DNA from: Epithemia pelagica
Taxonomy: Eukaryota > Protista > Bacillariophyta
Reading direction: 5' to 3'
NCBI GenBank assembly: GCA_946965045.2
Contig: OX337241.1
Span: 682,001-746,000 of the forward strand
DNA: 64,000 nt
Both the position numbers and the translations under genes were made by a program. The notes under the pieces were generated by a model. That model ran no database searches. It was not told the DNA's origin and was given only the letters and a program-made list of their open reading frames with translations. Positions 46,517-64,000 of this stretch are shown here, in pieces (the stretch's first letter is position 1; each line of letters begins with the position of its first letter).

Positions 46517-48403
46517 TCATCTCAACGCCCTTGCGTCGTAGTTCAATGAGCAACCAAAGACGCGAACCAAAATGTCTTTGAATCCATCCAAAAACGTTTG
46601 CGCTGTAGCATGGGACCATATGTGGGAGTAATACGTCAATCCTACGTGCATTTGCCCTCCCACCGTCTGTACATTCAAACCACCAAAGCCAAACGGACGA
46701 TGGTGTCGCGGCGTGGCGGCAAAAATTGCCTGTATAACCTCCCAACCAGCAACAACAGGCGGTGGCTCACCCGAGTTCTTCTGTTCGTTCGGGTCATCAT
46801 CCAAGCAGGAGGACGCCCAATCGACGGCACCATTGTTCGATATGAAAATGTTGGGCCCTACAATAGAAGGGAAATGAGTTTGGTAAGCCATTGGAAAGGA
46901 TGCGTTGAGACCAAGAAATGAGCGGTACGCTTTACGAAACAGCATGCGGTCAACGAATTGTCGTGACGACATGGGTTCAAATTTGTTCAAATCCTGTTTA
47001 ATGTGGCGAGCCAACTTCCATGAGTCTGCGGACTTTGGGAGGGGTTGGGCTATCCCATCCACGCATGGTTCTTGGCTCCACGCATTGTGTTCATGTTCAC
47101 GGGCAATGGGAATATCAATCTTGTAGGTGGTAAAGAAGCTTCCCGTTAATGCTTCATCACAGGGTTGCGTGTCATTTCCATCCATGTACTTCCACAATGA
47201 GATTAAATGGACAATGGAAAAGTAGGCATTTTGAGAAGGTATCCATCCATTTCTTCTTGAATGGGATTCTGGTGGATCTTGCTGTTGCCGTTCATGATGA
47301 GCCAGAGCAACCAAGGCTAAATGGGCTGCCGCACACATGGCACCATGAACGGTCGTTTGATGCCGTTTACAATTTTCCAAAAGACGGGACGTTTCACTTT
47401 CCGATAAACTAAACGTGCCTTGGTACGTTTCCTTACGAATGTGTGGATCATGGACTGCCGGTGCTCGTGCTAATGTAAGGCCACATTGTGTCCCATGCCA
47501 CCAGTGGGAGATATCTGAGAGGAAGAGTTTGGCACAACATGTAATGAACCGAAGCGGAGGCATGGAAGGAACCTTCTGATATTGTTCATGTTTGAAGGTA
47601 TTGGAAATCGATTCTTGATCATGGGCATCTGGTAGTGTCTCTCGCAAAGATTTTGCCCGCAAAGATTTTGCGTAAGAGGACGGACCATACAGACAGTAAA
47701 GAAATTCCCGCAAAAATCGATTCCGTGAGGTCCCATCAAAGATTAAATGACTGAGTGTAAAGACCAAGGCGGGTGCGTCCAACTGGTCTGCATTTGTCTC
47801 AGCAGGAGAAGTATGAACAAGGGCGACTTTCCACAAGGGACGGACGGGATCATCTTCTGTTGGATTCGGAAATTGCACAGTGTTTAATTGTTCGTGTACC
47901 ACTTGTTTCCAACTAAGATTCTTTTCCTTGTCAGTGTTTCCTTTGTTGAAAATTGTCACCACGCCTGAGGTAATCGGAGGATGCTCATCGCTTTCACTCG
48001 GCGGTGGGCCCCGTGATATCACAAAGCGATGGTTCTTGTCTGTCGGAGATGGCTTGGTTTCCACGTCATGCGAACGAGAAAGTGTCAAAACCGCTGCAAG
48101 GGATTTGTGTCGGTGTTGCAAGGCCTGAATCACATATTGCAACTCTGCAAGCGAGGGAAGACGAGTATTGGGCTTCAACACGACGCATGATACAATGTGA
48201 TCATTGCCCTCGTTCTGTGAGTGTTGCAAAAAGACTTGAGAAGCATCCAAAGCGACTTGTCCAGATTGCAGTGATTCCCCATTTCGTTCTGTCTTTCTGC
48301 TGGCTCTTCGAGGGTGCATATACCAACAAGCGTATGCGGTGACGGCAGCTGCAGCAGTAACTATTAGAGCAACGGCGGTTCCTGTTGTGCTGTATCTTTG
48401 CAT
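46517..48403 (-). CDS. Condensation-domain / alcohol acyltransferase-like protein with N-terminal membrane anchor
   Basis: LSHLIFDGTS (HxxxDG), ETSRLLENCKRHQTTVHGAMCAA, ISNNG. Confidence 0.78.
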   Translation of the reverse strand: MQRYSTTGTAVALIVTAAAAVTAYACWYMHPRRASRKTERNGESLQSGQVALDASQVFLQHSQNEGNDHIVSCVVLKPNTRLPSLAELQYVIQALQHRHKSLAAVLTLSRSHDVETKPSPTDKNHRFVISRGPPPSESDEHPPITSGVVTIFNKGNTDKEKNLSWKQVVHEQLNTVQFPNPTEDDPVRPLWKVALVHTSPAETNADQLDAPALVFTLSHLIFDGTSRNRFLREFLYCLYGPSSYAKSLRAKSLRETLPDAHDQESISNTFKHEQYQKVPSMPPLRFITCCAKLFLSDISHWWHGTQCGLTLARAPAVHDPHIRKETYQGTFSLSESETSRLLENCKRHQTTVHGAMCAAAHLALVALAHHERQQQDPPESHSRRNGWIPSQNAYFSIVHLISLWKYMDGNDTQPCDEALTGSFFTTYKIDIPIAREHEHNAWSQEPCVDGIAQPLPKSADSWKLARHIKQDLNKFEPMSSRQFVDRMLFRKAYRSFLGLNASFPMAYQTHFPSIVGPNIFISNNGAVDWASSCLDDDPNEQKNSGEPPPVVAGWEVIQAIFAATPRHHRPFGFGGLNVQTVGGQMHVGLTYYSHIWSHATAQTFLDGFKDILVRVFGCSLNYDARALR

Positions 48404-49005
48404 GTTCCCTCCATAGAAGATCCTTATGATGGCGAGAGCAAAACAGAATGGAGGCGACTGAAAAGCGTATAGTTAGGGCTAGGGCTAGCCATACTCACTT
48501 TTAATTGTAGAAGACGCCCGACGAGCTTGCATTAATTCCCAATCAATTATTGGTCATCGTTGAGTCTATTGCTACTACAATAGACGGTATTGTAGGAGAT
48601 GGGAGTTGTACAATACCTACGAGTACGATTACCAGTGCGAGTACGAGCTCCTACTCCTACCAGGGCTGTGTAGTACGATAGTCCAATTTTCGACGAAGTC
48701 CCTTACTTTGTACTGTACTTCACCGACTTTACGCATTCCCTTAGTATAGTCCCCCTCTCTCTCTCAAGGGACTGCCAGTCCCTCAGTCCATTCCCTATCG
48801 TCACTCACAACCGACTATAGTCTCTACCGTCATTCCCCCCCCCCCCCCAGCCTTCAATCGTACTATATTCCCTCTCTGGAGTCCCACCAGTCTCTCATAT
48901 CGTACTTTAAGTCCTAAAGTCAAGTACCTCCAGCCAAATATATAGACTGTATAGTACAAAATCACTCCTCATCTCCATATGAAACGACTACAACCATGAT
49001 ATCAT

Positions 49006-50064
49006 GTGTTTATCATTCCAAATCAACACAAGAATGAGGATAATCACAACACAGAGGTACGTTACCCATATCTTGGTTGCTTCGCCTCTCTTCAACAATC
49101 AAACCATTGTCCTCTCTTATCTTGTCTCATACAACGAGACGAGATCGAATCAAATGGAAGGAGTCCAAGATACCGTTTCGACATTGGAAGATCCTTCCAG
49201 GAGGGATCCCCCTTCCTAACCGTTCCGTCGAAGCATGAAGAAGACTCAGATATAGATTCTGTGTGCTTTTTGGAAAAGGATGAGGAAAGCGATACTATGG
49301 TAGATACAATCATCGATGATCTCTTGCGAGCACCTACGGACGACAGCAATCCAACAAACGAAGGAAAGGAAGTCATTACTGTGGATGTCTCGGATGACGA
49401 TGCCGGCGATAAGAAACCGGCAGCAAAGCCATCCAAAAAAGACAGCAACGATGAAAAAAAGAAACATGCTACCAAGAAACGTAAACAATCCATGATTCTG
49501 CAGCCAAGGCGGCTTTCCCCCCCACGAAAAGCAAAGGCAGCAGCGGCAGCTGCAGCTGCAGCTAATACCATGGCAACGAACCCTGCAGCGGCAAAAGCAC
49601 AAAAATCACTTGGGAAGGGAACAACCCCTCCATCTGCCAAACTTGTCGGAAATAAGAGGCGAAAAATTATTCGAAAGTCACCATTGTCGTTAAAGGCAGT
49701 CATTGGTGAGTCAAATGATGACGACAAGGGCGATGACGATTAGGACAATGAGGAAGAAAAGAACGACGGTCTGGGCAATGAAAATGGAGCAGTATTAGAA
49801 GGAGAAGAGTCACAAGATTTGTTGGGAGACAAAGATGATCAGCATGACCAAGAGGCCGACCAAGAAGACGACCAAGAGGACGATGAGGACGATGAAATTG
49901 ACGAAGAAAGTGGTGAGGATAGTGGCAGAGAAAGTAATGAGGATAGTGACAGAGAAAGTGATGCAGAGGAAAATGATCTCAATGACGGTGAGGATGGTGA
50001 CGCCGATCAAGAGGAGGAAGACAACGATGAGGATGCATCGTCCGCCGAAGCAGAATTTCAATGA
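49006..50064 (+). pseudogene. hAT transposase remnant (C-terminal tail only; in-frame TAG at 49741-49743)
   Basis: FLEKDEESDTMVDTIIDDL and QPRRLSPPRKAK align with FGDKDSDAAMNEVFDLEL and LPTRQSPPRQAK of the 61350 ORF; acidic tail; catalytic core absent. Confidence 0.7.
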
Positions 50065-50126
50065 ACAAGATCAGGAAGTTGACCAAAATCTACGAGAGAG
50101 AAAGAATTAGTAATGCATATCATAAT

Positions 50127-51911
50127 TTATCTATAAGTATTGATCATTGATTTGACCTTCTGGAATACGTCGTCGTGGAGGTGGAGTTTTTTTCCGAGGC
50201 GAGACAGTAAATTAGTGCGTAAATCAATGGTAGCAGAATGCTGCCCTAGAGCACCGAATAGTGGATTGATAAGAGACCATTTATCCATGGGAACCCATGC
50301 TTCCAAATGTTTTGATGTCGCTAAGCCGCTGAGTTTTGGAGGCACCCAACCCATCTTGTGTGCCCAGCGAATAACATGTATGTCTGAAGGTATACCGTCG
50401 ACACGTCCGAATGCCGCCTCCAGTATTATGCATGCAGTCTTATACCCAATGCCATCGAGGGTCATCAACTCGTGGATTGTAATGTTGTTGGGAATTATCC
50501 CATTGTGGCGCTGTAGAAAGTAGTCGGCCGCATTTACAATGCGCTCGGCGTTGACGTTATATCGTCCAAGTTCCGATATTAGGGAGCACATAGCATCCAT
50601 GCCGTACTTGTTGGCGATCTCCGACACAGCATAGGCAGACGTCATTCCACAAGCAAAAAGACGGGGCATTACGGAACTGAGTTGTAAATCTGAAGTGCTT
50701 CAACTCATACAGATCGTCATCAAGACCATGAATGGCCGATCTGAAAGAGGATTGTCCGCGTAATTGTTAATCCATGACTCCCAATCATCCCGAGGAGCCA
50801 CGATTCCAAAGTGTTTCAACTCTTGGTGAAACATGACCAGTTGTCCGAGTTCTGTCAGTCGATGGTCTAGAACAGTTGCAGGAATGGGAGGGACTATCAC
50901 ATGGAGATCGGATGGCAGGCATGTGGCGATCATCGTCGTCTTTTTGTTTATATTTGATGGTTTTTTTAGAACGTGAAATCGATTGAAGAAATAATGATAT
51001 AATGGTGTTGCAAGAACGAGTGGAATACGAATGTGTTGGATGCTGGGTATGCTGGGTAGCTTTCTTCGGTGGAGATTTAAGAAGATTCTTCTTTTTGGGA
51101 GATTTGTTCACGGCAGGTGGATTGTCTTTTTTTCGTCGGCATGTAGGGGAGGACAGTGTATCTTGTCGTATAGCTGCGTCAATTGGGCAATATAAGGGGT
51201 GATGCAACTTGGAACACAGTCCTCTTGATCGGATTCTTCGCTGTTACATTCGCATAAAATATATTCGTTGACTAGTTTTTGAGGTTGTTGTGTGCAATGG
51301 AATCCAGTTGATGTGTGCATCATCCAGGACAGAATGATAGATTGGGATGAAACATTCGGACATTTTTGTTTTACACGATGGGTGTTTCTCATACATGCGT
51401 GAAAATGAGGGCATTGATCAATCTGTAGCGTGGGTGTACATTGAACAGTAAGTGTAAGACTCTTGCAATGATCAGGCATGAAGGGTTGAAACTCATGATC
51501 TGATGAATTCGGAACTTGCGGAGATGGACCGTGTAGATGAGTAATGACAATGCCAGCCATGATTGTAAGCTTGTCGTCATACTCCAAGGTGAACAATCTG
51601 CAAGCGTGAGTGTTGGAGTTGCTCGTGTTTTCTTCTTTGCAAGAAATGGACCCAGAATTCTGAATTAACCATGCAACAGTAAATCGTTTCACCCATAGAT
51701 GAAGTTGGCGCCGAAGAAGGTCTTTGGGAGATTGCTCTTGGATATATTTTTTCGTGTCTTCGAAGTAAGCAAAATTCGACTCCAGAATGAACTTCAGATT
51801 ACATCGTGAAGAGAAATGAAGGTATTTGCGAGAAGTTGATGGTTCCATGTACCTTGTTCCTTGAGTTGTGGAGGAATGGTTTGGGGGAGGAAAGTTGAGT
51901 GTGGGAGACAC
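50127..51911 (-). pseudogene. Endonuclease III-like HhH-GPD glycosylase pseudogene (cargo of hAT 1)
   Basis: LMTLDGIGYKTA, GIPSDIHV; collinear with 59322-61196; two frameshifts and an in-frame TGA at 50700-50702 (CMS*STSD versus CMSASTSD). Confidence 0.88.
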
Positions 51912-52460
51912 TTTTTTTCGATGGTTGATGGAGTGAGAGTGAGGTGCGAGGGTGTGAGGTGTGTTGCTGCTGATAGCGTTGTTGTGATGGGCGTGGGTCT
52001 CATGTGGGTCTCATGTACGTATAGTAGCGTGGTGGAGTATACATGGATTTCGTACTGTGAAGTCATGACTTAGGGACTATAGTACCATAGTACATGAAGA
52101 TTATGAAAGGGACTATAGTCCACATAGTATAGTCCAATGTTGTATTTCGATGTACTATAGTCATCGGTGATAGTCTATGGGTGAGTGGAATTGGGACTAT
52201 CAGTCAAGGGACTATTCCATGTGTGGTGGCTAGGGTGAACTATAGTCATTTAGTACAGTCTACCGCGTTTGTAAATGGGATTAGTAGTCTCTTAGTATAG
52301 TGGAACATCGCGAAATTGCCTTTTGCGCCTGATGGTCAGCAACGTCGGCAACATGACACTCATAGCAAAGGCTCGTAGCAGTGGTAGCTTACCAAGTCAA
52401 CCTATAGATACAATCAGTTGGCATACAAATAGACAACTAACATTCATTAGTCATTAGGCA

Positions 52461-53428
52461 CTAGTCTTCGTAGTCAACCTGAAATAGTTGTTCGCCGTTG
52501 TTGATTGTAAGCTGGCAGACGATGGCAACAGCTCTGAAAACGTCCGCATGCTGGTTGAACTCGTGTCGAAATGTCTGGGCGAGGCAGCCCCAAAGCTTGA
52601 ACCTCTTGTTGATTGTTTCCTGACGACTACGGACACGTTGTTGCATTTTTTTCTTTTCGGGTAGATTGGTGAAGCCCTTTGGGCATTTTACTTTCTGGGG
52701 ATGTTCCCCGACGTATCCATCATCTGCTTCAATGCGCTCGTTGGGTTCGAGGTGCGAGAGTAGTGAGTTGCGGAAGATCATAAGATCATTCCACAACCCA
52801 CACTCATATGGCCCGTTGATCCACACAATATCTCCGGTGCGAATACAAAGGCCCACCTCATACCGAAGACCACTCTTTTTAAACTTGTACGAAAAAAACC
52901 TGCGGCCATGCTCGGGGACACGAAAGTCCGTCCCATCAACTGACATCAGGCAGTCATTGCCAATATCTGTCTTAAACCTATTCTCAAATATTATCTGAAG
53001 CAATCTGGTTAGATAAGAAAAGACAGACATCACTTTCGCAAAGTAGGAGCACCACTTACCACTAGGGGTTCTAGGTTTGCAATCGCCGGAATGAATAACC
53101 ACGTCCACTTGCGGAAGGTTTCCGGGTCAACACCACCTACAAGGGCACACAATGACTTTGCATTTGAGTAGACCTTCAGAAATAGAAGGGTCCACAACAA
53201 ATGAGTCATTGTACCCCCTGTAGGTATGGTGTCGGTGGTTCCCAGCAAGGACCACAAAGACAAAAACACTGCCACCGAACACCCAAAAAAACTCCGGAAC
53301 TCCAGATCCTCAGTCTCTGGAGAGCGCTGTCTTCGACCATCACGTCCCCAGATCCGACGAGCAATCCTGAGCACATCATTGGCATCAGGTGGCTCGGGCC
53401 GTGGTCGCTTTCGATCTGGTTCATTCAT
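52461..53428 (-). CDS. Harbinger/DDE_Tnp_4-type transposase, two exons (53428-53060, 52994-52461)
   Basis: SVDGTDF, EADDGY, RSRQETINKRFK catalytic motifs; 65-bp GTAAGT..TTCAG intron restores the frame. Confidence 0.88.
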
Positions 53429-53958
53429 CTTTTGTTGTGACACAGTTTGGTATTTGATGTTGTCTGGCTGGGGAGCAGGGGTCGTGTGAGAGTTGCACCA
53501 ACCGACACTCAAGACCCCAAACAAGTTATGCCCAATCATTGATTACACATGAAAAGCAGGAAGGGTTAGGTGAGTCATCTACTATATGTTCAAAAAGTTC
53601 TGTTGGTCATGTCACATGGACATAAAATTATTGGTACATAGCCAACACACCAATCATAGATCATAGTTAGGAGTAGTCATAGCCCATGGACAACGGACAT
53701 TCCTCACAGATCATGCTCATAACCATAATAGAGTGGCAAGACAACAACAACTATTGTAGGAACTAGTTAACGATTCTACCGGGACCCATTTGAACTTTGA
53801 AGTCATTGGACGTTGAGTTTACTCTATGACATTGGATTCGGGGAAGCACATGAACAAAGAAATCACATCTCTGTTGTGTGCTCGTTTCTGATCTTCCATA
53901 GATTAATATATGCCCTGTATGTGTGATTGAATAATTGATTTTCTGTACAGGTTTTTTG

Positions 53959-54249
53959 TTTTACACTTTTTGGCCGTTTTACACTTTTTGGCCGTTTTGC
54001 GCCTTTCGGCCGTTTTGCACTTTTTGGCCGTTTTGCGCCTTTCGGCCGTTTTGCGCCTTTCGGCCGTTTTGCGCCTTCCAGTACAAAATCCTACGTATTT
54101 TCTCGTAGCACCGGCCGTTTTGCGCCTTTTGGTCGTTTTGCGCCTTTTGGACGCTTTGCGCCTTTTGGCCGTTTTGCATTTTTCGGCCGTTTTGCATTTT
54201 TCGGCCGTTTTGTGATTTCCGTAGTTTTGCGATTTCTGTAGTTCTGCGA
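53959..54249. repeat. 18-bp tandem array, two blocks of six units (GGCCGTTTTGCGCCTTTY)
   Basis: Unit starts at 53972, 53990, 54008, 54026, 54044, 54062 and at 54113, 54131, 54149, 54167, 54185, 54203. Confidence 0.95.
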
Positions 54250-54600
54250 ATCAATCCTACTCGCTTAAGCCCATCTAAATTGTGGTCACTAATATGTAGC
54301 AGCATAGCATGGATCTGCTCGTCACCGTCACACTTACTCGTAAACCATTAGTTTACTCATCACATAAAAAATTGTTACTATACCCCTAGTTATGCCTGCA
54401 TGATTTAGTATTGACTTGCTGCCGGTTTTAAAGGTAGAAAGATTTAAGCCTATCAGTGATGTCTCACGAGTTCCCATGTGATACGTCTCCCTACCGCTCT
54501 GAATTTTGTTCCCGCATGGCACATGTTGTGGGTTGTTGCTTCACAGGACTGAAGCCTGTTGTGGTTTTTCAAAAAGAAAATCTCGCCACAAAACCACATA

Positions 54601-55709
54601 ATGTCAGAAGTTGGAGCAGCACCAAAGTGGGGCAAACAAGACGACGCCAAACTAGCAGCGTTGTTCCGGAAGAAGTTGTCCAAGGGTGGAGTGTCACCAC
54701 AGGACTTGGGAAGAGATAACATTGAAAAGGTGCGCCAAACTCACTTTCCTGAGCGTGCCTACCGGAACTTTGCACCTCTGTTCCGCAGGAAAGCACGTGC
54801 CTTCAACGTGGAAAGCTCACTTGCTGGTGCAAGGAAAGCCCAAGGTACGTACTGATTCAATTGCGAATATCTTCTGCTGACCAGTTTCTAACTGGTTCTT
54901 GTAACTGTTCAACAACAATGGGTCGAAACAAAGAAGACGAACGCGAGGAAGTCGAAGAGGAGGCAGAGGAAGTTGACGAGGCTTCTGCAGGTGAAGAAGA
55001 AGAACTTGAAGTAGAAGAAGAACAGGCAGGTGGCGAGGCCCAGGACATTTCAGACCTCTTGGGAAAAATGAGTATTGGACGGGCATCCACCAAATCACCT
55101 TTTGGAATGGAAGTTGTCTTCCCTTACTTTCTCTACACGTATGAGGAAATGGACCAAATGCATGTGAGTATCGATTTCCTTGTCTTTGGATTCAAGGAAA
55201 GTGCATTTCGTCCGCAGGTTGCTTCTGGTGGGCAAGAGTTGGAGCTCGGAACCATCATCCCTCCCATGTTCGTGCACCCTGATAGACTCTTCCAAGCAAA
55301 TGAGGAAATCAACGACAACACACACAAGGCAACGGCCTACAAAATGATGGTGGATAGCATCCAGAAGAAGCATGGCGATGGCACGTCCGAACAGCGCCTA
55401 TTTGGTGAACCACAGAGGGTCAAATTGCCGTTCACATGCGAGCAGGAGATCTCAATGTGGGAGGTTCAACACTTTCCTAACATTGACAGGGACTTTGACC
55501 CGATGACTGGTCATACACACATGGTCTCCATCTTGGCAATTGATCTTGTTGCCACGGAGAAGCGCGTCAGGAAGAGGAATGGTGGAGTTCGTGTCTTTGG
55601 CTCACCCTCTGGGATCCGCAACAACAACAATTATCGCAACAACAATAACAACGACAACTACACCTATGATGATGATGACAACGCCACTATGGTGCGCGCT
55701 GATGAATGA
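54601..55709 (+). CDS. Harbinger second ORF (putative Myb/SANT-like DNA-binding partner), two exons (54601-54844, 54934-55709)
   Basis: Basic helical N-terminus KWGKQDDAKLAALFRK..NFAPLFRRK; 89-bp GTACGT..AAG intron keeps the frame; lies inside the TIRs. The Myb-like call rests on context. Confidence 0.65.
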
Positions 55710-57618
55710 ATGCTATTTGACCATGGCGAGGAACCACTCTGGCCTGATGGTGCATTCAATCATAATCTTAGTTATTAATATATTTACCTAGTTTAGCAGT
55801 TTGTTTCCACATTGCGGATGTTAGCTAACATAGGATTGGGGATTTCCCAACTCTTGACCAGGCCCAAAACGCAATTTCGCGATGTTCCAGTCCCGTTAGA
55901 GTGTTGAATGGAGTGTAGTACCTATGGTCTAGTCAGGTACATATCGTAGATGGACTGAAAGTCATGTAGTCTAGTCTCGACATGTTTGGGTGATACTTCA
56001 CAGCTCTGACTCCTACCTCATCGGTCCTCGTACCTCGTACTCGTATCTCGTATTCGTATCTCGTACTCGTATTGAGTATTGAGTCCTATCAGTACGAGTA
56101 AGGAGTAGAGAGTAGAGGACGAGTAACGAGTCCCTCGGTATCAGTGTCCACTGCTTAGCTGTTTTTTGTATGTGCCATCTTCAAAGGTTCCCAAGGGGAC
56201 ACAGACAGCATTTGTCGTTTTTTGTCTGTCTGTCTAGCCATTAAAATTCCTCAGGGTTGAAGCAAGGCCAGCGTGCAAGTGACAGTTGACGGTTGGTGGT
56301 TGTCCTCGCCGGGTCACCACGATTCAAATTTGGGCATCCATCATCATCTCGACACCTGTCACAAAAACCCAAAACCGAGCCAAATGCTTGACCATGACAG
56401 GGGTGAGGTGAGAACAATGGATGGATCATGCTGGACTGATCCGTTTCTCTCTATTGCTGCTTATTACTTATCTTGTGGTCTCTTTTCCCTTTTTCTCACG
56501 CATCACTGCTGCAGCTGTCTTTCCTATTGTTCTTGCATGATCCTTTACTTTTGTCTCATTTCGTACGAGTAGATGACAAGCCGCCAGATGTCAACTGGAA
56601 TATCTTTTCCTTGTCGTAATCGTTTGTTGTTTGATTGTTTTTTGGCTACTGTCATATGCTCTATAGGATAGATTATTCTCTCTTGTCTCTCATCATAGCG
56701 TCATTCTCAATCATTTCTCAACGATGTTGTTTTTGCATCAAATAGATGGGAAGCCATCTTGCCACACCCTACTGACCAATTATCATATCCTACCTAGGTA
56801 GTCAACACAGAGTGCTCAAAGTGAGCGGTACAAGCTTGTGAGAGCTGTTCTGTTGTGTTTTCATAGCAAAACTGAGGGCCATCGTCGTGCTCAAAACAAA
56901 GAACAGAGCTCCAACGAATTCAGAAGGCTCAAAAGTCTCATGGATGACAAGCACTGGCGTTATACTACTAGTAAATAAACAAAAGAAGGTCTAGAGTATA
57001 GAGTATGTATTTTAATGCAATCAAAGTTATGGGGCTCAGCAAAAGCCAGTCATTTCTGTTCGACAAGAATGAACAATGGCAAGTAATGAGCTGCCCAGCG
57101 ACTAAACAGATGAGTAGCGTCTCACACGAGCAGAGCAAACAAAAGTGGCAAGTGGCAGTGAGCATGACTGATGTCATTGACAACATGGCAATTGGCAATG
57201 GATCAAGCTCACCTGGAAAGCCAGTAACATTCGTAAGTACCTAGTAAGTACGATGTGCTTTGGCAAAAGAAAAGAGAATTGTGAGCCTGCCCCGAATTAT
57301 GCAACAACCAACCGTCATCCACGAAGGGGACGCTTGTTGGGCTTGCGTCCGCTTCAAACGTCGAAAAATTCAGCTGGGCATGCGTGCCAATTTGCAATTT
57401 GATCATTTCTATTTGCATCAAAAGCGAAAAATGCTGTCTGTGTCCACTTGGGAACCTGTGAAGGTGGCACAGACAAAAAACAGCTAAGCAGTGGACACTG
57501 ATACCGAGGGATTGAGTACGAGGATGGAGACGGAGAACATCGAAATAAAAAATAATAGGTGAGTTGGGTCCCGCTTTCTTCCATGTATTTCCGACTAGAG
57601 CTATTAAGAGATAAGCTT

Positions 57619-58166
57619 TAGAGCTAGGTCCAGCGGTGAGCGGTCACGCATCTCCAGCGCTGGAGATCCAGCGCTGAAGAATCTCCAGCATAGATTTTCT
57701 CTGGCGCGTAAGGTAAGCGCTACGTTGGGGATGGTAGTCTTTTCTTTGCACTGGTCACTATTTATCTTTTCTCATTTGTTTGTTTCATACTGGTCACCCT
57801 GTGTCATTCATTTGCTACACACAGCCTTCCAAAATGTCTGAATGCAATGACAATGATGACTCTTCAACGGTGGAAGAGTGCAATATGGATGGCAATCCGA
57901 AGCACACCCCGAAATGAGGATTCTGTAAGAGGACACCTATCAGTGTATTCTTGAAAGGAGATAATATTGACATGACAACAAAACCAAAAGATTCTGGAGA
58001 CCAAGCAACTATTCCACCACTGGAAAGGAAAGCTCTACCAAGATAGGTGCTCTAGTTACTTCTTCTAGCTAGGCATTTTCATCATGGTAGCACAGGTAGT
58101 CTTTTCTCCAGCTGGAGGCGCGTACCTAGCTCCAGCAGAGATGAGCTCTTGCTGGACCGACCTCTA
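57619..58166. mobile_element. Small non-autonomous TIR element (548 bp)
   Basis: TIRs TAGAGCTAGGTCCAGC and TAGAGGTCGGTCCAGC (14/16), CTCCAGC subterminal repeats, flanks AGATAAGCTT and ATATAAGCTT. Confidence 0.7.
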
Positions 58167-59321
58167 ATATAAGCTTTAAGCTTTTGTTGTACACATACGT
58201 CATCGTCATTCTGATGTCTGATGAGGGTTCAGGTTTACTTATTTGTTCTCTAGATAATAGATAAGTATGTCCCATTTCGACTAATCTTCTTCAATCTACG
58301 AGCTCGTATGGTTAATGTTGTTAATTGTTTATCTATGCTGTGTAGGAGTTAGGAGTACTCGTAGGATAATGAGTTACTAATTAAGACTGTTTCCATTGTG
58401 GGAACGGATATTTCAGAGGGGTCCCAATTTGAGTTCGTTACATAGATCAACTCGTCTTTGAATGCTCTTTCGATTGGTTCAATATATGCCTCGCCAAATT
58501 TAGATATACACTTTGAAATATTGTACTAAAGTATGGCCGGCAAAAATGAAGTATTCAAAACCCTAATGTGAGATGTGCTAAAAGGTACGTAAAAACGGTA
58601 CTGCAGTCGCGCACGTGAATGACAATAGGGGTATATCGCGCGCATACCGCGCAAAACTTTCAAGCTTGATTTCTCGAAAAGTGGATTTTTCAAATATCCC
58701 TGGTGACGATGGAATCAGTCTTAATTACTACCTACTCGTAGTTACTAGTTACGAGCAACGAGCACTCATAATTCCAAAGCACTGTAAAATATGGATAAGG
58801 ACGCGTCCAACTGCCCCTGTTCTAACAACGAAATTGCTGATGCGTTCATTTGTTTTATAGACAGAGTTGTGAATTACCATAACCTCTTATATGAATAGAA
58901 TTAACGTAATTTATTCCATTACATAATAATGAAGAATTAAGTTTTATCATTATATTCAAAATAACCAAACGTTATGAATTCCGTTTTCCAAAAATTGTTC
59001 CTTCCCAAGTTCATGTAATATCATTTACGTAATATATTCTTTGTCAAATTTTAAAGAGAATTAATTTTTTTAATAAATTAGAGGCGAATCCTTTCAAGAA
59101 TGAATTTGACTCATTTATTCACCCAACGGAATTACCCCTTCATTCATTTGCAGTAATTTAATTTAATAAATTAATTACCATAAATTACGTAATATTATTA
59201 CCTACGCTGAATATTTCACCCATTACATGTTTCGCGACTGACACCACAATAGATGAAAATAGTACTCACACAACTCACGTTGCTGCTTGTGCCTCATCGC
59301 CTTGTGTTTTAAGAGAGCACC

Positions 59322-61196
59322 ATGGATGATGCTTCCCACCCAAATGTCATTTTCGAATCAAAATGCTGTCCCAAATATGTCATGCATTGCAACCCTTCTC
59401 TTTATGCACTATTGATTGATTTGAAAGAAACAGATGGAATCCTGAATCGTCCTGTTTCCGAGATTTTTCAGGCAATCCAACAAAAAACCATTCACTGGCT
59501 CATTCGCGTTGGTGGTCAGATTTCATGTCCTCCTCATGACCCCCCTACACACAAATGTTGTATTCCCACTCTTTCTTTCCAACAACAACTCGATTTGCTT
59601 TCGAGTATCGTATACCAAGCCATTTTCCAAGAAACTGACAAGGACACTTACAGGTTTTCTTCAAGCAACACAGAACAACTTCTCATGGTGGATCAGACCA
59701 TCACCTGTACGACGGTCATTCTGTCTCTAAATTGTAAAACACAATTTTCAATCATTCGGAACAAGGTACTGGATGACTGTGTTCATTACATCGACAACCA
59801 GCTAGCCATATCACCGACAACTTCAATCAGCACTCTTGTTACATCTTGGATGATCCAAAAGAAGCCACTCATTGGTGTCCATGCAAGCGCCCAACGAGTG
59901 GAGGGCTTCAATATCATCGACGTTCCAAATATTCCAGTGGACTATGATTCTTTTCCTACCGATTTATACAATCCTCCAACGGTATCTCCTTTCCTATCAT
60001 TGATTGAACATCATGTATTGTTGAACATGTCTTCTGCTCATGCCCAAATTGATACCATTTTGCCTGCCGCATCACAATATACTCCTCCACAAGAAACAAT
60101 CCACCGTCTACCATCCCCCTACAAAACTCCACAACGTTCTACTGACACAAGTACAACAACCAATCTTCCATCAGACACGACAGATATTGCCTCTCCTCCT
60201 GCCAGAAAGCAACAAAAGCTCTTCCACAATCAATTTGCATTGCACTCGTACTCAACGAGATCTCGAAATGAAAAAATAGCGGCATTCCTTGGGTCGATTT
60301 CACGCTCAAAGTCAGCCATTAAATACGTGCAAAGTGGAACAAAGAGACACATGCCTGGGGAAAAAGCTATCGTCAAACCACCATGTGACAGTCATGTATC
60401 AATTCCTGATTGTGACAAATTTCCAGAAATATTGCTTGAACGAACTTTTCAGTTCTACTCTCTTCTGAACTTCTGGACAAGTTTGAAAAAGGATGGCATC
60501 AACGTCCCTCGGGATTCTTGGGAGGACTGGGTCGACTCTTCTATCACTGCAGACGACCCACAGGCAGACAAAGCCTTCATGTTCCTCATGACAATATGCA
60601 TGAGTGCAAGTACCTCCGATGCACAACTTAGCACTGTGATGCCTCGTATTTTCTCGTTTGGATTGACATCCGCAACGGCGGTGATTGACATTTCACAAAG
60701 ATACGGCATGGACGCCTTGTGCTCCATTCTTTCCGAACCGGGACGTTTTTACAAAAATGCTGAACACATTGTGAATGCCGCGGATTACTTTATCCAAGAA
60801 CACAATGGAGTTATTCCGACGAATATTTCTATCCAGGAGCTTACCACTCTGCTCGGTATAGGGTACAAGACTGCTGCCATTGTAATCGAAGCTTCCTTTG
60901 ATCGGTCCGAAGGAATTCCCTCCGACATCCACGTGATGCGATGGTCCCAAAATCTTGGATGGGTACCCACGAAATGTGAAGCTTATGAGTGTTCAAAACA
61001 TTTGGAATCATGGGTTCCCCAAAAGTTCTGGAGAGACATCAACCCTTTATTGGGATCCTTGAGTCAGATCGCTGTATCTGGTGAAGGATCCAAGGTGCGG
61101 GAGCGCCTTGCAAAGAGCAATAATTTCTGTCCCTTTTTCAAAAAGAAGGTCATTTCTATGTTTGACAAGTACATGGGCAAAAGAAAGTCGTACTAG
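59322..61196 (+). CDS. Endonuclease III-like HhH-GPD DNA glycosylase/AP lyase with long unknown N-terminal region
   Basis: FLMTICMSASTSDAQL, HhH LTTLLGIGYKTAAIV (catalytic Lys position), GIPSDIHVMRW (catalytic Asp); no Cys-X6-Cys-X2-Cys-X5-Cys motif. Confidence 0.9.
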   Translation: MDDASHPNVIFESKCCPKYVMHCNPSLYALLIDLKETDGILNRPVSEIFQAIQQKTIHWLIRVGGQISCPPHDPPTHKCCIPTLSFQQQLDLLSSIVYQAIFQETDKDTYRFSSSNTEQLLMVDQTITCTTVILSLNCKTQFSIIRNKVLDDCVHYIDNQLAISPTTSISTLVTSWMIQKKPLIGVHASAQRVEGFNIIDVPNIPVDYDSFPTDLYNPPTVSPFLSLIEHHVLLNMSSAHAQIDTILPAASQYTPPQETIHRLPSPYKTPQRSTDTSTTTNLPSDTTDIASPPARKQQKLFHNQFALHSYSTRSRNEKIAAFLGSISRSKSAIKYVQSGTKRHMPGEKAIVKPPCDSHVSIPDCDKFPEILLERTFQFYSLLNFWTSLKKDGINVPRDSWEDWVDSSITADDPQADKAFMFLMTICMSASTSDAQLSTVMPRIFSFGLTSATAVIDISQRYGMDALCSILSEPGRFYKNAEHIVNAADYFIQEHNGVIPTNISIQELTTLLGIGYKTAAIVIEASFDRSEGIPSDIHVMRWSQNLGWVPTKCEAYECSKHLESWVPQKFWRDINPLLGSLSQIAVSGEGSKVRERLAKSNNFCPFFKKKVISMFDKYMGKRKSY

Positions 61197-61349
61197 TTGT
61201 TGAAAGTTGATTCTTACTGCAGTACATGTATTACGTTCCTAATATTAAATTGTTTTCACTGTCAATATCTCTCATCATCAATTTGCTTCACTTGGCTCAA
61301 CTGCTATTGCTCGTTTTTGTTTTCATTCTCGTTTATACCTCTCTTCATG

Positions 61350-64000
61350 TTAGTCGTCATACACTTCTTCATCATTGTGTTCTTCATTCCCGTGTTCTTC
61401 ATCCTCCGAGTCCGGCTCCAGCTCCTGTAAGACATCCTCAATACTCTGATCGTTCTTGGTATCATCTTGTTGTTCATCCTCATAGTTCCTGTCGTCCTTT
61501 GGTTGTCCCTTTCTTCCTTTAGCATGTTTCTTGGCATTCACCTGGCTTCTCGACTGAGATTGTTTCTGCCTTTCTTCGTGTCCACCTGACAGGGACAGAG
61601 ATGTTTGTTTCATAGATGCCTGCTTCAAACGGCTTTTGTTTTTGGCTTGACGAGGAGGTGACTGTCTAGTCGGCAAAAGTTTTTGCTGCTTGGTTTTCTT
61701 TCTACGTTGAGCATCTGTCTTTCTCTTATTCCCAGATGTATCCCTGTCACTATCCCTCTGCTCGGTCTGAGACGCCGTCAGGTCGATTGCCTCTTGTACT
61801 ACAGCTTGCTCTAATCCTTTCAATTCCAGATCAAACACTTCATTCATTGCCGCATCACTGTCTTTGTCACCAAAACTTTCGTCTTCCGATGAATGTTGGA
61901 CCGAGTCATCGTCTGGGTGACGCTCAAAACGAACCACCTTCACTGTGTCCCATTCAATAGGTTTTTTTCTTCCATCTCTCACCATTTGGGAAAGACGTTG
62001 TGCTTCACGAATTCGTTTTTCTTTGCTCATTTCAGCACAAACTTCAGGTGTTTCCAATCCACCAGACAAGAGAGAGCGTTCATCCTCGTCCTCAGAAAGT
62101 TCCTCAAAGTACGTCATACCAATGGACTGATCGTTTGTGACTAGCCCCTTCTCTGCATCTGCTTTCTTGTTGTACTCCACATAACTCTGAGTTGCATCCC
62201 TCATGCCACTCATCTGAACAAGAGCAGTTTGTCTTGTAGAGAAATCCTTGGTGGCCGCTTTCTCCTTTGTGGATGAATCCATAGTTGTGCCTGCCTCGTT
62301 CAATGTATCAGACGTCTCGGAGTTACCAATTCCAACGTAGTGTGATATTTGTTGTTTAGTATTTCGTTGCAATTCCAACTCTCTGGCGATAATCTCCCGC
62401 TTAAGTGACCTGGTTAGAAAATCCATTGTCCTCATTTCATAATGCTTCTTCAGCATATTCGCCATAAGTTTATTCTGTTGAAACCACGTTCCTAACGAAA
62501 AAATGCGTTCCTGGAACGCATTGGTGGACGGCTTTGTGAGCCATATCATTGCCATCACATACATAAGAGGGAATTCTGTCTTGTGATCGCTCCACCAGGC
62601 CATGATATCGAAATACTTTGATATCTGACAATAATTCGAATTCAAACAGGCTTTTCGAAAAGCAGTCTTCTCCTGTTCGTTCCATTTTGGTGCCTCGTTT
62701 GAATATTTCTCTGTTGGATAGTCTGCAATGACCTTGGCCCATTGCTTGTCAATATGGACCCCACACATTCGTTTAAAGGAATCGAAGGCTTCTGTGCAAG
62801 CATTTTTTAATGCCACCAGAACCTCGGTTTCTGTGCCTCCCATAGAGGCCGCTCCAGTGATCTGGAGAAGGGCCTGTTCTTTGAGTTCTCTTGTTCTGCG
62901 TATGGACTCAAAAACATCTTCTTCTTCATACCGTTCCTTCTTCTTTCGTGAAGATCCTGTGTTGCCTGGGTTGGTAGGGGGAGTTGCTGTAGTCTCTTTG
63001 GGTGGAGTAGTTGGTTCCCCCTGGGATTGCTGTCGTTGTTTTTCAAGTAGCGCGCCAAGAGGTGAAGCCTTAGCGTTGCTGAACTTGGACATCATGTCGT
63101 CTAAGAAAATACGACGAGCCTTCCTTACTTTTTCGGAATCGAATATGGCCAAAGACTGGAACATGTTGTCATAAATATTCGCCAACATAGGATTGCAGCA
63201 AACTGCTTTCAACGCATCCTCATCTGTATCCAAAAGATAGATGCAGTACTCATGCAGAATCCGGCGAATGAGCTTCTTGGGACCATCACCCAATTCATTG
63301 TAAGACACTCCAATTCGCAATGCGTTCAACTCACTCATGGGTGCAGATGCATCCCATTTCTCGTCTTCTTCAAGATCCGCCTCGTTGACTGGAACGCAGG
63401 AGACTTTGCTCATCCTCATTCGTTCAGTCTTGAAATGAGAGAGATAAATCTCCAGAAGCGTGGCCGAACTGGCGCCAGGTTCGTCGGTTTGGAGCTGTAG
63501 AGCAACAGCCTTCAGAGGACTGAGGATACCTTCATATTGGGCCAGAAGGTCCCATTCGTCTTGAGTAGGATATAGAGAAACAAAAGTAGGGTCACTGAGT
63601 TTTGATGTCAGGACATAAAGATCGAAAAACCATTTGTTCCGCAGTAAAGCTTGGATGAGAATGACACATCCACCAACACGGGTGTCGTTTGGCATGGGGA
63701 TTAAGATCAACGTGAACCCCAGTTCTTCGGCCTTCTTCTTGAGTTTCTCCCAACGATGAAATGCGTGCTTGCTAGTCACCCACCCAGCCAGTTTCTTGAA
63801 TTTTCCATACAGTTCACAAAATTCTGGAAAAGAATCGATAAGAACACCTTTCCTGAACCGTTGCACAAGCCCTGTGGCGTGCTTGAGGACCAATTCGGCC
63901 CGATGCATATCGCATCGGCCAACCTTGGCATGATCTCCGACAATGTATTTACCGGCAAGGACAGCAGCTGATGTATTGTCATTTACCGAAGCCACAAGGT
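61350..64000 (-). CDS. hAT-family transposase (5'-truncated by window edge)
   Basis: NDNTSAA (second catalytic Asp), CDMH (CxxH), PNDTRVGG, and dimerisation block DIMAWWSDHKTEFPLMYVMAMIWLTKPSTNAFQERIFS; frame open to the window end. Confidence 0.88.
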   Translation of the reverse strand, partial: LVASVNDNTSAAVLAGKYIVGDHAKVGRCDMHRAELVLKHATGLVQRFRKGVLIDSFPEFCELYGKFKKLAGWVTSKHAFHRWEKLKKKAEELGFTLILIPMPNDTRVGGCVILIQALLRNKWFFDLYVLTSKLSDPTFVSLYPTQDEWDLLAQYEGILSPLKAVALQLQTDEPGASSATLLEIYLSHFKTERMRMSKVSCVPVNEADLEEDEKWDASAPMSELNALRIGVSYNELGDGPKKLIRRILHEYCIYLLDTDEDALKAVCCNPMLANIYDNMFQSLAIFDSEKVRKARRIFLDDMMSKFSNAKASPLGALLEKQRQQSQGEPTTPPKETTATPPTNPGNTGSSRKKKERYEEEDVFESIRRTRELKEQALLQITGAASMGGTETEVLVALKNACTEAFDSFKRMCGVHIDKQWAKVIADYPTEKYSNEAPKWNEQEKTAFRKACLNSNYCQISKYFDIMAWWSDHKTEFPLMYVMAMIWLTKPSTNAFQERIFSLGTWFQQNKLMANMLKKHYEMRTMDFLTRSLKREIIARELELQRNTKQQISHYVGIGNSETSDTLNEAGTTMDSSTKEKAATKDFSTRQTALVQMSGMRDATQSYVEYNKKADAEKGLVTNDQSIGMTYFEELSEDEDERSLLSGGLETPEVCAEMSKEKRIREAQRLSQMVRDGRKKPIEWDTVKVVRFERHPDDDSVQHSSEDESFGDKDSDAAMNEVFDLELKGLEQAVVQEAIDLTASQTEQRDSDRDTSGNKRKTDAQRRKKTKQQKLLPTRQSPPRQAKNKSRLKQASMKQTSLSLSGGHEERQKQSQSRSQVNAKKHAKGRKGQPKDDRNYEDEQQDDTKNDQSIEDVLQELEPDSEDEEHGNEEHNDEEVYDD

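What the first reader, a model, noticed from the sequence alone, without database searches (positions are those of the whole stretch)
48661..64000. hAT transposons carrying a dedicated HhH-GPD DNA glycosylase: candidate anti-silencing or repair cargo system
Seen: two hAT elements in opposite orientation share one layout, TIR - glycosylase gene -> <- transposase. They have different subterminal repeats and strongly diverged proteins (glycosylase cores roughly 55-60% identical by eye, N-termini and transposase tails much less), so this is an old conserved association rather than a recent capture or duplication. Established: hATs normally encode only a transposase; the HhH-GPD superfamily includes Nth/MutY/Ogg1 and the plant 5mC glycosylases DEMETER/ROS1; TE-encoded anti-silencing factors exist (VANC of VANDAL Mutators). 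Inference: the enzyme may remove 5mC or another modified base from the element, or process donor-site hairpins or lesions after excision.
Basis: partly seen in the sequence, partly recalled or inferred. Interest (0 to 1): 0.92.

Follow-up and report, generated by a model that had tools for sequence, protein, structure and literature searches.

The report
Diatom hAT transposons carrying a glycosylase
A lineage of cut-and-paste (hAT) transposons in a diatom has carried, for a long time and under selection, a second gene for an endonuclease III-like DNA base-excision enzyme, which appears to be unreported and may be how these elements remove a silencing or damage mark from DNA.

Summary
Element 2 (58862 to the window end) is an intact copy of a 6.8-kb hAT. 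Two full copies in a public diatom assembly are about 99.6% identical and have TIRs and perfect 8-bp TSDs. Both enclose a 624-aa glycosylase gene convergent with a 1256-aa transposase.

Element 1 (48661-56008) is also a true hAT, with TIRs and the TSD ACTCCTAC, but it is dead. Its transposase body is deleted, its glycosylase has in-frame stops, and a Harbinger element is nested inside it.

All ten further loci read in that assembly show the same gene pair, and seven have matching TIRs and TSDs. Transposase and glycosylase trees of nine elements have identical topology. Synonymous sites are saturated while dN in the core is 0.2-0.55. This indicates one old acquisition kept by selection.

The protein has three parts: a confidently modelled N-terminal domain with no fold match, a linker, and an NTH1-derived core. 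The catalytic Lys and Asp are invariant and the Fe-S cysteines are absent.

About 44 clusters exist, only in this assembly and in metagenome or raw-run contigs. I found no paper describing this. What the enzyme does is inferred; anti-silencing is my leading guess. First readers noted the same system on other pieces of this genome.

The parts
48653..48660 (.). Left 8-bp target-site duplication of element 1 (ACTCCTAC)
   Evidence: Identical 8-mer at 56009-56016
48661..48677 (+). Left TIR of element 1 (CAGGGCTGTGTAGTA...)
   Evidence: Matches the reverse complement of 55992-56008 at about 14 of 17 positions and fits the family TIR consensus CAGRGTTGTGWAGTA
48973..50110 (+). Remnant of the transposase gene of element 1: low-complexity C-terminal tail only (ORFs 49006-49743 and on to 50110); the catalytic body is deleted
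   Evidence: No transposase similarity at E<10. One weak hit to tail residues 1121-1170 of the L003 transposase, E=0.001. DNA comparison with L003 shows 4.6 kb replaced by 1.25 kb
50130..51815 (-). Glycosylase pseudogene of element 1
   Evidence: 55% identical to the L003 glycosylase over 552 aa. In-frame stops at 51108-51110 and 50700-50702, and a conserved motif readable only in another frame. HhH-GPD hit at 24 bits
52302..55888 (-). Nested PIF/Harbinger transposon interrupting the right subterminal region of element 1
   Evidence: TIR pair of about 30 nt, 94% complementary (I3). 3-bp TSD AGT at 52299-52301 and 55889-55891. DDE_Tnp_4 at 32.6 bits, above the cut-off
55992..56008 (-). Right TIR of element 1
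   Evidence: Reverse complement reads CAGAGCTGTGAAGTA; followed by the TSD ACTCCTAC at 56009-56016
58854..58861 (.). Left TSD position of element 2 (TTTATAGA); its partner lies beyond the window
   Evidence: Homology to L007 and L008 starts exactly at 58862
58862..58877 (+). Left TIR of element 2 (CAGAGTTGTGAATTAC)
   Evidence: Same terminus in L007 and L008, which have right TIRs and perfect 8-bp TSDs
58878..59321 (+). AT-rich subterminal region with AATTAC/TTACGTAAT-type repeats, and the 5' region of the glycosylase gene
   Evidence: Sequence read directly; k-mer counts in the identical L007 copy
59322..61196 (+). Intact glycosylase gene of element 2 (624 aa). Residues 1-240 form a new domain, 241-310 are disordered, and about 312-624 form the Nth-like core with Lys516 and Asp535 and no Fe-S cysteines
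61350..64000 (-). hAT transposase gene of element 2, C-terminal 881 codons; the N-terminal 375 codons lie beyond the window
   Evidence: Dimer_Tnp_hAT at 31.8 bits, above the 21.4 cut-off. 99.2% identical to residues 375-1227 of the 1256-aa L007/L008 protein

Best explanation
SHOWN. The region holds two members of a hAT transposon lineage of a diatom whose autonomous elements are 6.4-7.1 kb long. They have TIRs of the form CAGRGTTGTGWAGTA and make 8-bp TSDs. They carry two convergent genes: a 1200-1350-aa hAT transposase and a 540-640-aa accessory protein.

The accessory protein has three parts. The first is a fast-evolving N-terminal domain of about 240 aa with no detectable known fold. The second is a disordered linker followed by a conserved basic motif (TR..SRSK..I.Y..RH.PG). 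The third is a core derived from eukaryotic NTH1 (endonuclease III). That core keeps the HhH motif, the catalytic Lys (G[IV]G[YH]KTA) and the catalytic Asp (D[IV]H), but has lost the [4Fe-4S] cysteine cluster.

The gene was acquired once, has co-diverged with the transposase and is under purifying selection. Element 2 belongs to a recently active family. Element 1 is a deleted, pseudogenised and Harbinger-interrupted relic.

INFERRED. The enzyme is an active bifunctional glycosylase/AP-lyase that serves the element. My preferred reading is that it excises a host-imposed or damage-derived modified pyrimidine from element DNA, so that base-excision repair restores unmodified, expressible DNA. 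Candidate substrates are 5mC, an oxidised or deaminated derivative of it, or a similar mark. The variable N-terminal domain may supply targeting, by binding DNA or the transposase.
For: Layout inside TIRs and TSDs: L002, L003, L004, L006, L007, L008, L012 and element 1 in the window.

Same gene pair at all ten further loci read in assembly ERZ21939226.

Recent activity: three copies at different sites are 99.6-100% identical, and reads show further flanks.

Single acquisition and co-inheritance: the transposase and glycosylase trees of nine elements have identical topology with mostly full support. The TE glycosylases form one clade with SH-aLRT 100 among 124 Nth-like cores.

Selection: dS is saturated in nearly all pairs while core dN is 0.21-0.59. 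For the closest pair the N-terminal omega is 0.31. At least nine ORFs remain intact at 20-70% identity.

Enzyme identity: human NTHL1 is the best solved relative (E=6.7e-14, or 3.9e-22 with a profile). Fold TM is 0.73 to NTHL1 and to EndoIII. TIGR01083 nth scores 63-70 bits. Lys516 and Asp535 are invariant in 25 diverged members. No member has C-x6-C-x2-C-x5-C.

Plausibility of a methylation target: diatoms methylate and thereby repress TEs (PMC9998398). Transposon-borne TET/JBP enzymes and VANC are precedents for TE-encoded anti-silencing (PMC12730594, PMC5735166).

Possible transcription: run X4 has a depth profile unlike the DNA runs, and it covers the glycosylase ORF but not the transposase.
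Against: No biochemical, methylome or clean expression data exist.

The core resembles NTH1, which acts on oxidised pyrimidines, and not DME/ROS1. It lacks the Fe-S cluster that DME/ROS1 need.

CpG observed/expected in the elements is 0.75-0.84. That is no higher than in the nested Harbinger (0.79) and lower than in host flanks (0.86-1.03), so there is no footprint of protection from methylation-driven decay.

The subterminal repeats echo each family's TIR and look like transposase sites, so nothing links the N-terminal domain to them.

The Pfam HhH-GPD score is below the gathering threshold (21.6 and 24 against 26.2).

The nature of run X4 as RNA is inferred, not recorded.
Confidence: 0.5

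Rival explanations
1. Transposition-coupled repair factor. The glycosylase/AP-lyase works on the transposition intermediates or the donor and target sites. It could clean damaged bases or AP sites at excision gaps and hairpins, or nick DNA to channel repair towards homologous restoration of the donor copy. It would not act on epigenetic marks.
For: The core is NTH1-like, a general oxidised-pyrimidine and AP-lyase enzyme. The gene co-evolves tightly with the transposase. There is no CpG signature of demethylation.
Against: Other hAT elements transpose with the transposase alone (established knowledge). The host presumably has its own NTH1, since NTH1-type proteins from eukaryotes dominate the next hits. 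No interaction evidence exists.
Confidence: 0.2
2. Counter-defence against a mutagenic or marking host defence other than 5mC, for example deaminated cytosine, 5-hydroxymethyluracil or another hypermodified pyrimidine. The enzyme would remove the lesion before it becomes fixed as a mutation or is read as a silencing signal.
For: Nth-family enzymes act on a broad set of modified pyrimidines (established knowledge). The aromatic residue next to the catalytic Lys (Tyr or His in G[IV]G[YH]KTA, in place of Pro in NTH1) is invariant in the TE clade, which suggests an altered pocket.
Against: No such defence is documented in diatoms in the papers searched. This reading is not distinguishable from the best explanation with the present data.
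Confidence: 0.12
3. Non-catalytic accessory protein. The HhH fold and the new N-terminal domain serve only to bind or bend DNA or to recruit and import the transposase, as the Myb-like second protein of PIF/Harbinger elements does.
For: Two-gene cut-and-paste elements with a DNA-binding helper are known (PIF/Harbinger; established knowledge). N-terminal residues 145-240 weakly resemble winged-helix modules, Z about 4.
Against: The catalytic Lys and Asp and the surrounding motif are invariant across 25 members that are otherwise 22-59% identical. That is not expected for a purely structural role.
Confidence: 0.1
4. Functionless passenger: a host Nth gene fragment captured by a hAT element and hitch-hiking without benefit to the element.
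For: Gene capture by DNA transposons is common (established knowledge).
Against: The gene shows one clade, trees identical to the transposase trees, saturated dS with low dN, and intact ORFs of 540-640 aa in at least nine families. It also has a dedicated N-terminal domain not found elsewhere.
Confidence: 0.03

Closest known systems
Endonuclease III / eukaryotic NTH1 (HhH-GPD superfamily; human NTHL1, PDB 7rds/7rdt)
   Same: Best sequence and fold match. Shares the HhH motif, the catalytic Lys and Asp of a bifunctional glycosylase/AP-lyase, and the six-helix-barrel plus HhH architecture.
   Different: No [4Fe-4S] cysteine motif. Tyr or His replaces Pro next to the catalytic Lys. About 310 extra N-terminal residues include a new domain. 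The gene is encoded inside a transposon. Scores fall far below the nth equivalog cut-off (70 against 211.7 bits).
TET/JBP dioxygenase genes carried by fungal DNA transposons, including hAT7, Kyakuja-Dileera-Zisupton and others (PMC12730594)
   Same: A DNA-modification-removing enzyme carried as a second gene inside TIR transposons, including hAT elements. It is proposed to undo epigenetic silencing of the element.
   Different: A different enzyme class (oxidation rather than base excision) and a different host kingdom. In fungi the gene moved repeatedly between transposon superfamilies, whereas here it co-diverges strictly with one hAT lineage.
VANC anti-silencing proteins of Arabidopsis VANDAL (Mutator-like) elements (PMC5735166)
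   Same: A TE-encoded accessory protein that evolves quickly and acts for its own family. It is a possible analogue for the variable N-terminal domain.
   Different: VANC is not an enzyme of base excision. No sequence or fold relation was tested or seen.
DEMETER/ROS1 5mC DNA glycosylases of plants
   Same: HhH-GPD bifunctional glycosylases with catalytic Lys and Asp that excise 5mC and counteract TE silencing (established knowledge; PMC12228296).
   Different: DME/ROS1 are large host proteins with an Fe-S cluster and extra conserved domains. The TE protein is nearer to NTH1, lacks the cluster and has an unrelated N-terminus. Activity on 5mC is not shown.
Clusterless MutY-like glycosylase (PDB 8uuc)
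   Same: A precedent that a member of an Fe-S-bearing HhH-GPD lineage can lose the cluster and still bind lesion DNA. It appears among the fold hits.
   Different: Bacterial, MutY-type and not TE-borne; only a distant fold match (TM 0.34).

Membership tests
hAT transposon superfamily | 8-bp target-site duplication | tested here: met
   Perfect 8-bp TSDs in element 1 (ACTCCTAC) and in L002, L003, L004, L006, L007, L008 and L012
hAT transposon superfamily | Short TIRs beginning with CAG-type termini | tested here: met
   CAGRGTTGTGWAGTA at both ends, 11-16 of 16 positions matching
hAT transposon superfamily | Transposase with the C-terminal hAT dimerisation domain | tested here: met
   PF05699 scores 25.8-31.8 bits against a cut-off of 21.4 in five transposases. 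The only PDB hits are to Hermes in this region
hAT transposon superfamily | RNase-H-like DDE catalytic core with an insertion domain | not tested
   No alignment to Hermes or Ac catalytic residues was made. phmmer sees only the dimerisation region
HhH-GPD superfamily, endonuclease III (Nth/NTH1) family | HhH motif followed by a Gly/Pro-rich loop and a catalytic Asp | tested here: met
   LxxLxGIGYKTA...IPSDIHV, with Asp535 invariant in A1 and A2 and aligned to the VDTHV Asp of NTHL1
HhH-GPD superfamily, endonuclease III (Nth/NTH1) family | Catalytic Lys of bifunctional glycosylase/lyases | tested here: met
   Lys516 is invariant and aligned to the Lys of GVGPKMA in NTHL1
HhH-GPD superfamily, endonuclease III (Nth/NTH1) family | [4Fe-4S] cluster loop, C-x6-C-x2-C-x5-C | tested here: not met
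   Absent from every TE-clade member and present in many outgroup NTH1/Nth sequences. The model shows C-terminal helices in its place
HhH-GPD superfamily, endonuclease III (Nth/NTH1) family | Curated model score above the family threshold | tested here: not met
   PF00730 scores 21.6 and 24 against 26.2. TIGR01083 scores 63-70 against 211.7. The protein is derived from the family but is not an equivalog
HhH-GPD superfamily, endonuclease III (Nth/NTH1) family | Fold | tested here: met
   Foldseek against PDB: NTHL1 at E=2e-7 and TM(target) 0.73; EndoIII 1p59 at TM 0.73
DEMETER/ROS1 5mC glycosylases | Fe-S cluster plus the DME-specific flanking domains and 5mC excision | tested here: inconclusive
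   The Fe-S motif is absent. No DME/ROS1 chain appeared in the PDB profile search at E<=0.01, but no direct comparison with DME sequences was made. Activity cannot be tested here
PIF/Harbinger (nested element 52302-55888) | DDE_Tnp_4 transposase, TIRs and a 3-bp TSD | tested here: met
   PF13359 scores 32.6 against 24.8. TIR pair of about 30 nt at 94%. TSD AGT

The most novel reading that the evidence does not exclude
These hAT elements encode a self-serving base-excision anti-silencing enzyme. A cluster-less NTH1 derivative has been retargeted to remove 5mC, or a derivative or another host-imposed pyrimidine mark, from the element's own DNA. It is guided by a previously unseen, fast-evolving N-terminal domain that recognises the cognate family or its transposase. 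This would be the first transposon-encoded DNA glycosylase 'demethylase', and an origin of 5mC excision independent of plant DME/ROS1.
Probability: 0.3. Interest if true: 0.92.

Novelty: new variant of a known kind. Interest (0 to 1): 0.8.

Why it matters
Cut-and-paste transposons are generally thought to need only a transposase. The few known exceptions (VANC, transposon-borne TET/JBP, DNMTs in retrotransposons) have been informative about the arms race between transposons and epigenetic silencing.

This is a clean, abundant and recently active system in a diatom. A base-excision enzyme has been kept by one transposon lineage through deep divergence. It is fused to a domain with no known fold and has lost the Fe-S cluster.

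The system offers three things:
- a directly testable candidate for TE-encoded removal of DNA marks in a group where TE methylation is known but active demethylation is not understood;
- a natural experiment on how NTH1 chemistry can be re-specified;
- a possibly useful small cluster-free glycosylase.

If the enzyme instead assists transposition, that would be a new requirement for a hAT element.

Tried and rejected
1. I looked for a transposase body in element 1 with tblastn, using ten transposases down to E=10.

2. I used CpG observed/expected as a proxy for escape from methylation. The elements are not CpG-richer than other TEs, so this is uninformative.

3. dN/dS among near-identical copies rests on too few changes (6 in the glycosylase, 16 in the transposase) and is expected to be neutral. 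Between families dS is saturated, so only upper bounds on omega are possible.

4. Fold searches of the N-terminal domain found no credible match. I searched PDB with Foldseek, AFDB clusters, the ESM Atlas and VIA-align wide. The best results were Z 5.0 and TM 0.32 or lower.

5. The viral-contig scan found no relative. The metagenome scan returned only Nth-like genes of about 25% identity.

6. Short metagenome and raw-run contigs (L009, L014, L015) cannot confirm a transposase next to the glycosylase, because only low-complexity tail ORFs are present. L009 does start with a family-type TIR.

7. The literature searches aimed at prior description found no transposon-encoded HhH-GPD glycosylase. 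Repbase Reports and subscription journals are not covered.

8. The species could not be named. The best named hits of a host housekeeping gene are all diatoms, at 63-68% identity.

9. I considered and rejected an 'ordinary host Nth gene beside a transposon' and a 'functionless captured passenger'.


Full report
WHAT IS IN THE WINDOW

The stretch 48661-64000 is a nest of transposons in a eukaryotic genome of about 44-47% GC.

The ORF at 59322-61196 (+, 624 aa) carries a weak HhH-GPD match. The ORF at 61350-63995 (-, 881 codons, running to the window edge) carries the hAT dimerisation domain above Pfam's threshold. A second glycosylase-like reading frame lies on the minus strand at about 50130-51815. 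It is 52% identical to the first over 266 residues, with weaker N-terminal similarity.

ELEMENT 1 (48661-56008)

The motif CAGGGCTGTGTAGTA at 48661 has an inverted partner that ends at 56008 (reverse complement CAGAGCTGTGAAGTA). Both are flanked by the same 8-mer, ACTCCTAC, at 48653-48660 and 56009-56016.

The extra length comes from a nested PIF/Harbinger element at 52302-55888. That element has TIRs of about 30 nt at 94%, the 3-bp TSD AGT, and a DDE_Tnp_4 ORF.

Without the Harbinger, element 1 is only about 3.76 kb. No transposase body can be found in it, even at E=10. DNA comparison with its nearest full-length relative (locus L003) shows both termini and the glycosylase gene aligned at 69-75% identity. 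The 4.6 kb between them in L003 is replaced by 1.25 kb. What remains on the plus strand (49006-50110) is a low-complexity tail with one weak hit (E=0.001) to the tail of the L003 transposase.

The glycosylase of element 1 is a pseudogene. It has in-frame TGA codons at 51108-51110 and 50700-50702. The second one interrupts the conserved MTICMS-STSD motif. The conserved HSYSTRS...SRSK motif is readable only in a different frame. Element 1 is therefore a dead, internally deleted relic and not a second example of the full layout.

ELEMENT 2 (58862 TO BEYOND THE WINDOW)

A protein search found a 99%-identical glycosylase at two sites of the public assembly ERZ21939226. Their DNA matches the window from exactly 58862 to 64000 at 99.6% identity. 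The two loci match each other over 6,799 bp at 99.96%.

The ends are CAGAGTTGTGAATTAC and CAGGGTTGTGAAGCTA (reverse complement). Perfect 8-bp TSDs flank them: TTGTTCAC in L007 and ATTCAGGC in L008. Element 2 is thus an intact copy of a 6,798-bp autonomous hAT, cut by the window edge. The full transposase has 1256 aa.

Contigs of public runs of the same organism show further junctions with other flanks. They also show a form in which 58772-58862 continues into sequence that is not element 2. That is consistent with insertion polymorphism or a paralogous flank, and I could not separate the two. Element depth is about 3.2 times (437.2 against 136.6 in run X1) that of a neighbouring unitig taken as single-copy.

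IS THE ASSOCIATION GENERAL?

Every one of the ten further loci read in that assembly shows the same arrangement (L001-L008, L012, L013; glycosylases 29-99% identical to the window protein over their full length). In each, the glycosylase on one strand is followed tail-to-tail by a 1160-1345-aa transposase with a hAT dimerisation hit. In L005 the transposase is split into two ORFs.

In L002, L003, L004, L006, L007, L008 and L012, TIRs matching at 11-16 of 16 positions and perfect 8-bp TSDs enclose both genes. L001 and L005 retain one recognisable terminus each.

An exhaustive profile search of 1.84 billion representatives gave 44 clusters below 1e-30, then a clear drop to ordinary Nth/NTH1 proteins. 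The members looked up come from this assembly, from sediment and other metagenomes, and from raw-run assemblies; none of them is in NCBI or UniRef.

One metagenome contig (L009, 43% identical over the catalytic core) begins with a family-type TIR (CAGGGTTCGGAAGT). Subterminal repeats and then the glycosylase gene follow it. The lineage therefore exists in at least one other organism.

Transposase relatives number 23 clusters at 90% identity, holding about 220 member sequences, all from ENA assemblies. The host is a diatom: a housekeeping gene in L012 has only diatoms among its best named hits, at 63-68% identity. The species was not identified.

ONE ACQUISITION, UNDER SELECTION

Maximum-likelihood trees of the nine transposases and of the nine partner glycosylases have the same topology, ((L006,L013),(L012,((L002,(L001,L008)),(L005,(L003,L004))))). 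Most branches are fully supported.

In a tree of 124 Nth-like cores the 30 TE-borne sequences form one clade with SH-aLRT 100. Their sister is a single unplaced sequence (P0037), followed by eukaryotic NTH1-type proteins carrying GVGPKMA.

Codon comparisons show synonymous sites saturated in almost all pairs, while dN in the core is 0.21-0.59. In the closest inter-family pair the N-terminal half gives dN/dS of 0.31.

Between the near-identical copies, changes look neutral (1 synonymous and 5 nonsynonymous in the glycosylase; 7 and 9 in the transposase). That is expected for individual insertions and does not bear on selection acting on the lineage.

THE PROTEIN

The best solved relative is human NTHL1 (E=6.7e-14 with the single sequence, 3.9e-22 with the profile). 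Bacterial endonuclease III follows.

The AlphaFold model (mean pLDDT 80.6) has three parts: a well-predicted N-terminal domain (1-240), a disordered linker (241-310), and a C-terminal domain. The C-terminal domain matches NTHL1 and EndoIII at a target-normalised TM of 0.73.

Lys516 in G[IV]G[YH]KTA and Asp535 in D[IV]H align with the catalytic Lys and Asp of NTHL1. Both are invariant in 25 members that are otherwise 22-59% identical. These are the residues that define bifunctional Nth-type enzymes (established knowledge; E. coli Lys120 and Asp138).

No member has the C-x6-C-x2-C-x5-C Fe-S motif, whereas many outgroup sequences do. Scores stay below Pfam's and NCBIfam's curated cut-offs. I therefore file the protein as derived from NTH1, not as an Nth equivalog.

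The N-terminal domain, modelled alone (pLDDT 81, pTM 0.67), has no credible structural neighbour. Foldseek against PDB gave E of 0.7 or worse. AFDB clusters gave E of 1.1 or worse. The ESM Atlas gave TM of 0.32 or less. VIA-align gave a best Z of 5.0, below its stated noise level. Residues 145-240 recur against winged-helix modules at Z of about 4, which is only a hint.

FUNCTION

Nothing here measures activity. The invariance of the catalytic pair argues for a working enzyme. The co-phylogeny argues that it serves the element.

I rank the readings as follows:
- Removal of a host-imposed or damage-derived pyrimidine modification from element DNA, an anti-silencing role in the broad sense: about 0.35, or about 0.45-0.5 if other marks are included.
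- A repair role coupled to transposition: about 0.2.
- A non-catalytic helper: about 0.1.
- A functionless passenger: below 0.05.

The closest precedents are transposon-borne TET/JBP genes in fungi, including hAT7 elements (PMC12730594), and VANC (PMC5735166).

Several points count against it. The core is NTH1-like, not DME-like. It lacks the Fe-S cluster. CpG observed/expected in the elements (0.75-0.84) shows no protection relative to another TE (0.79) or to host DNA (0.86-1.03).

Subterminal repeats differ between families but echo the inner part of each family's TIR, as transposase binding sites do. They give no evidence for targeting by the N-terminal domain.

Run X4 has a depth profile unlike the DNA runs. 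In X4 a flank contig is about 250-550 times deeper than the glycosylase pieces, whereas in DNA runs it is shallower than the element. X4 covers 59362-60743 at depth 2-5 and shows nothing on the transposase. If X4 is RNA, the glycosylase is transcribed at a low level without introns. This is tentative.

NOVELTY

The literature searches aimed at prior description found no transposon-encoded HhH-GPD glycosylase. Repbase Reports and subscription journals were not searchable.

First-stage readers of this scan noted the same system on many other pieces of this genome (63 notes mention a glycosylase), and none had been followed up. I rate it a new variant of a known kind: a hAT transposon with an enzymatic accessory gene, in the spirit of TET-bearing transposons, with a new enzyme class and a new domain.

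Noticed in passing
window 52302-55888: A complete-looking PIF/Harbinger element is nested in element 1. It has TIRs of about 30 nt, the TSD AGT (not the usual TWA), DDE_Tnp_4 ORFs at 52461-53539 (-), a second ORF at 54861-55709 (+) with no Pfam hit, and an 18-bp tandem array at 53918-54256.
   Followed up: partly
window 56131-57511: A MITE-like element has 92-nt TIRs that are 93% complementary. A 74%-identical relative sits just upstream of the hAT in locus L005 (8176-9516).
   Followed up: partly
window 58001-58800: Short sequences here have very high unitig depth in DNA runs, up to 9,500 against about 130 for single copy. A 42-nt inverted-repeat pair lies at 58372-58413 and 58692-58733. These look like high-copy small repeats next to the element 2 insertion site.
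   Followed up: no
window 58772-58862: Contigs in all four runs join this 91-bp segment to different sequence on both sides. This is either an allele or a paralogue lacking element 2 and the adjacent repeat. In run X4 it has a depth of 1265, so it may be part of a highly expressed transcript.
   Followed up: partly
window 59322-60044 (protein residues 1-240): The N-terminal domain of the accessory protein is confidently modelled but has no fold match in PDB, AFDB clusters or the ESM Atlas. Its secondary structure looks like two similar beta-hairpin plus helix units.
   Followed up: yes
window 46517-48403: A host ORF (628 aa, minus strand) directly left of element 1 has weak hits to condensation and alcohol-acetyltransferase families, all below their cut-offs.
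   Followed up: no
P0037 (raw-run contig, 415 aa): This single sequence is sister to the whole TE glycosylase clade. It carries GVGHKIA/DTH and has no Fe-S motif. Its genomic context is unknown, and it could mark the source of the capture.
   Followed up: no
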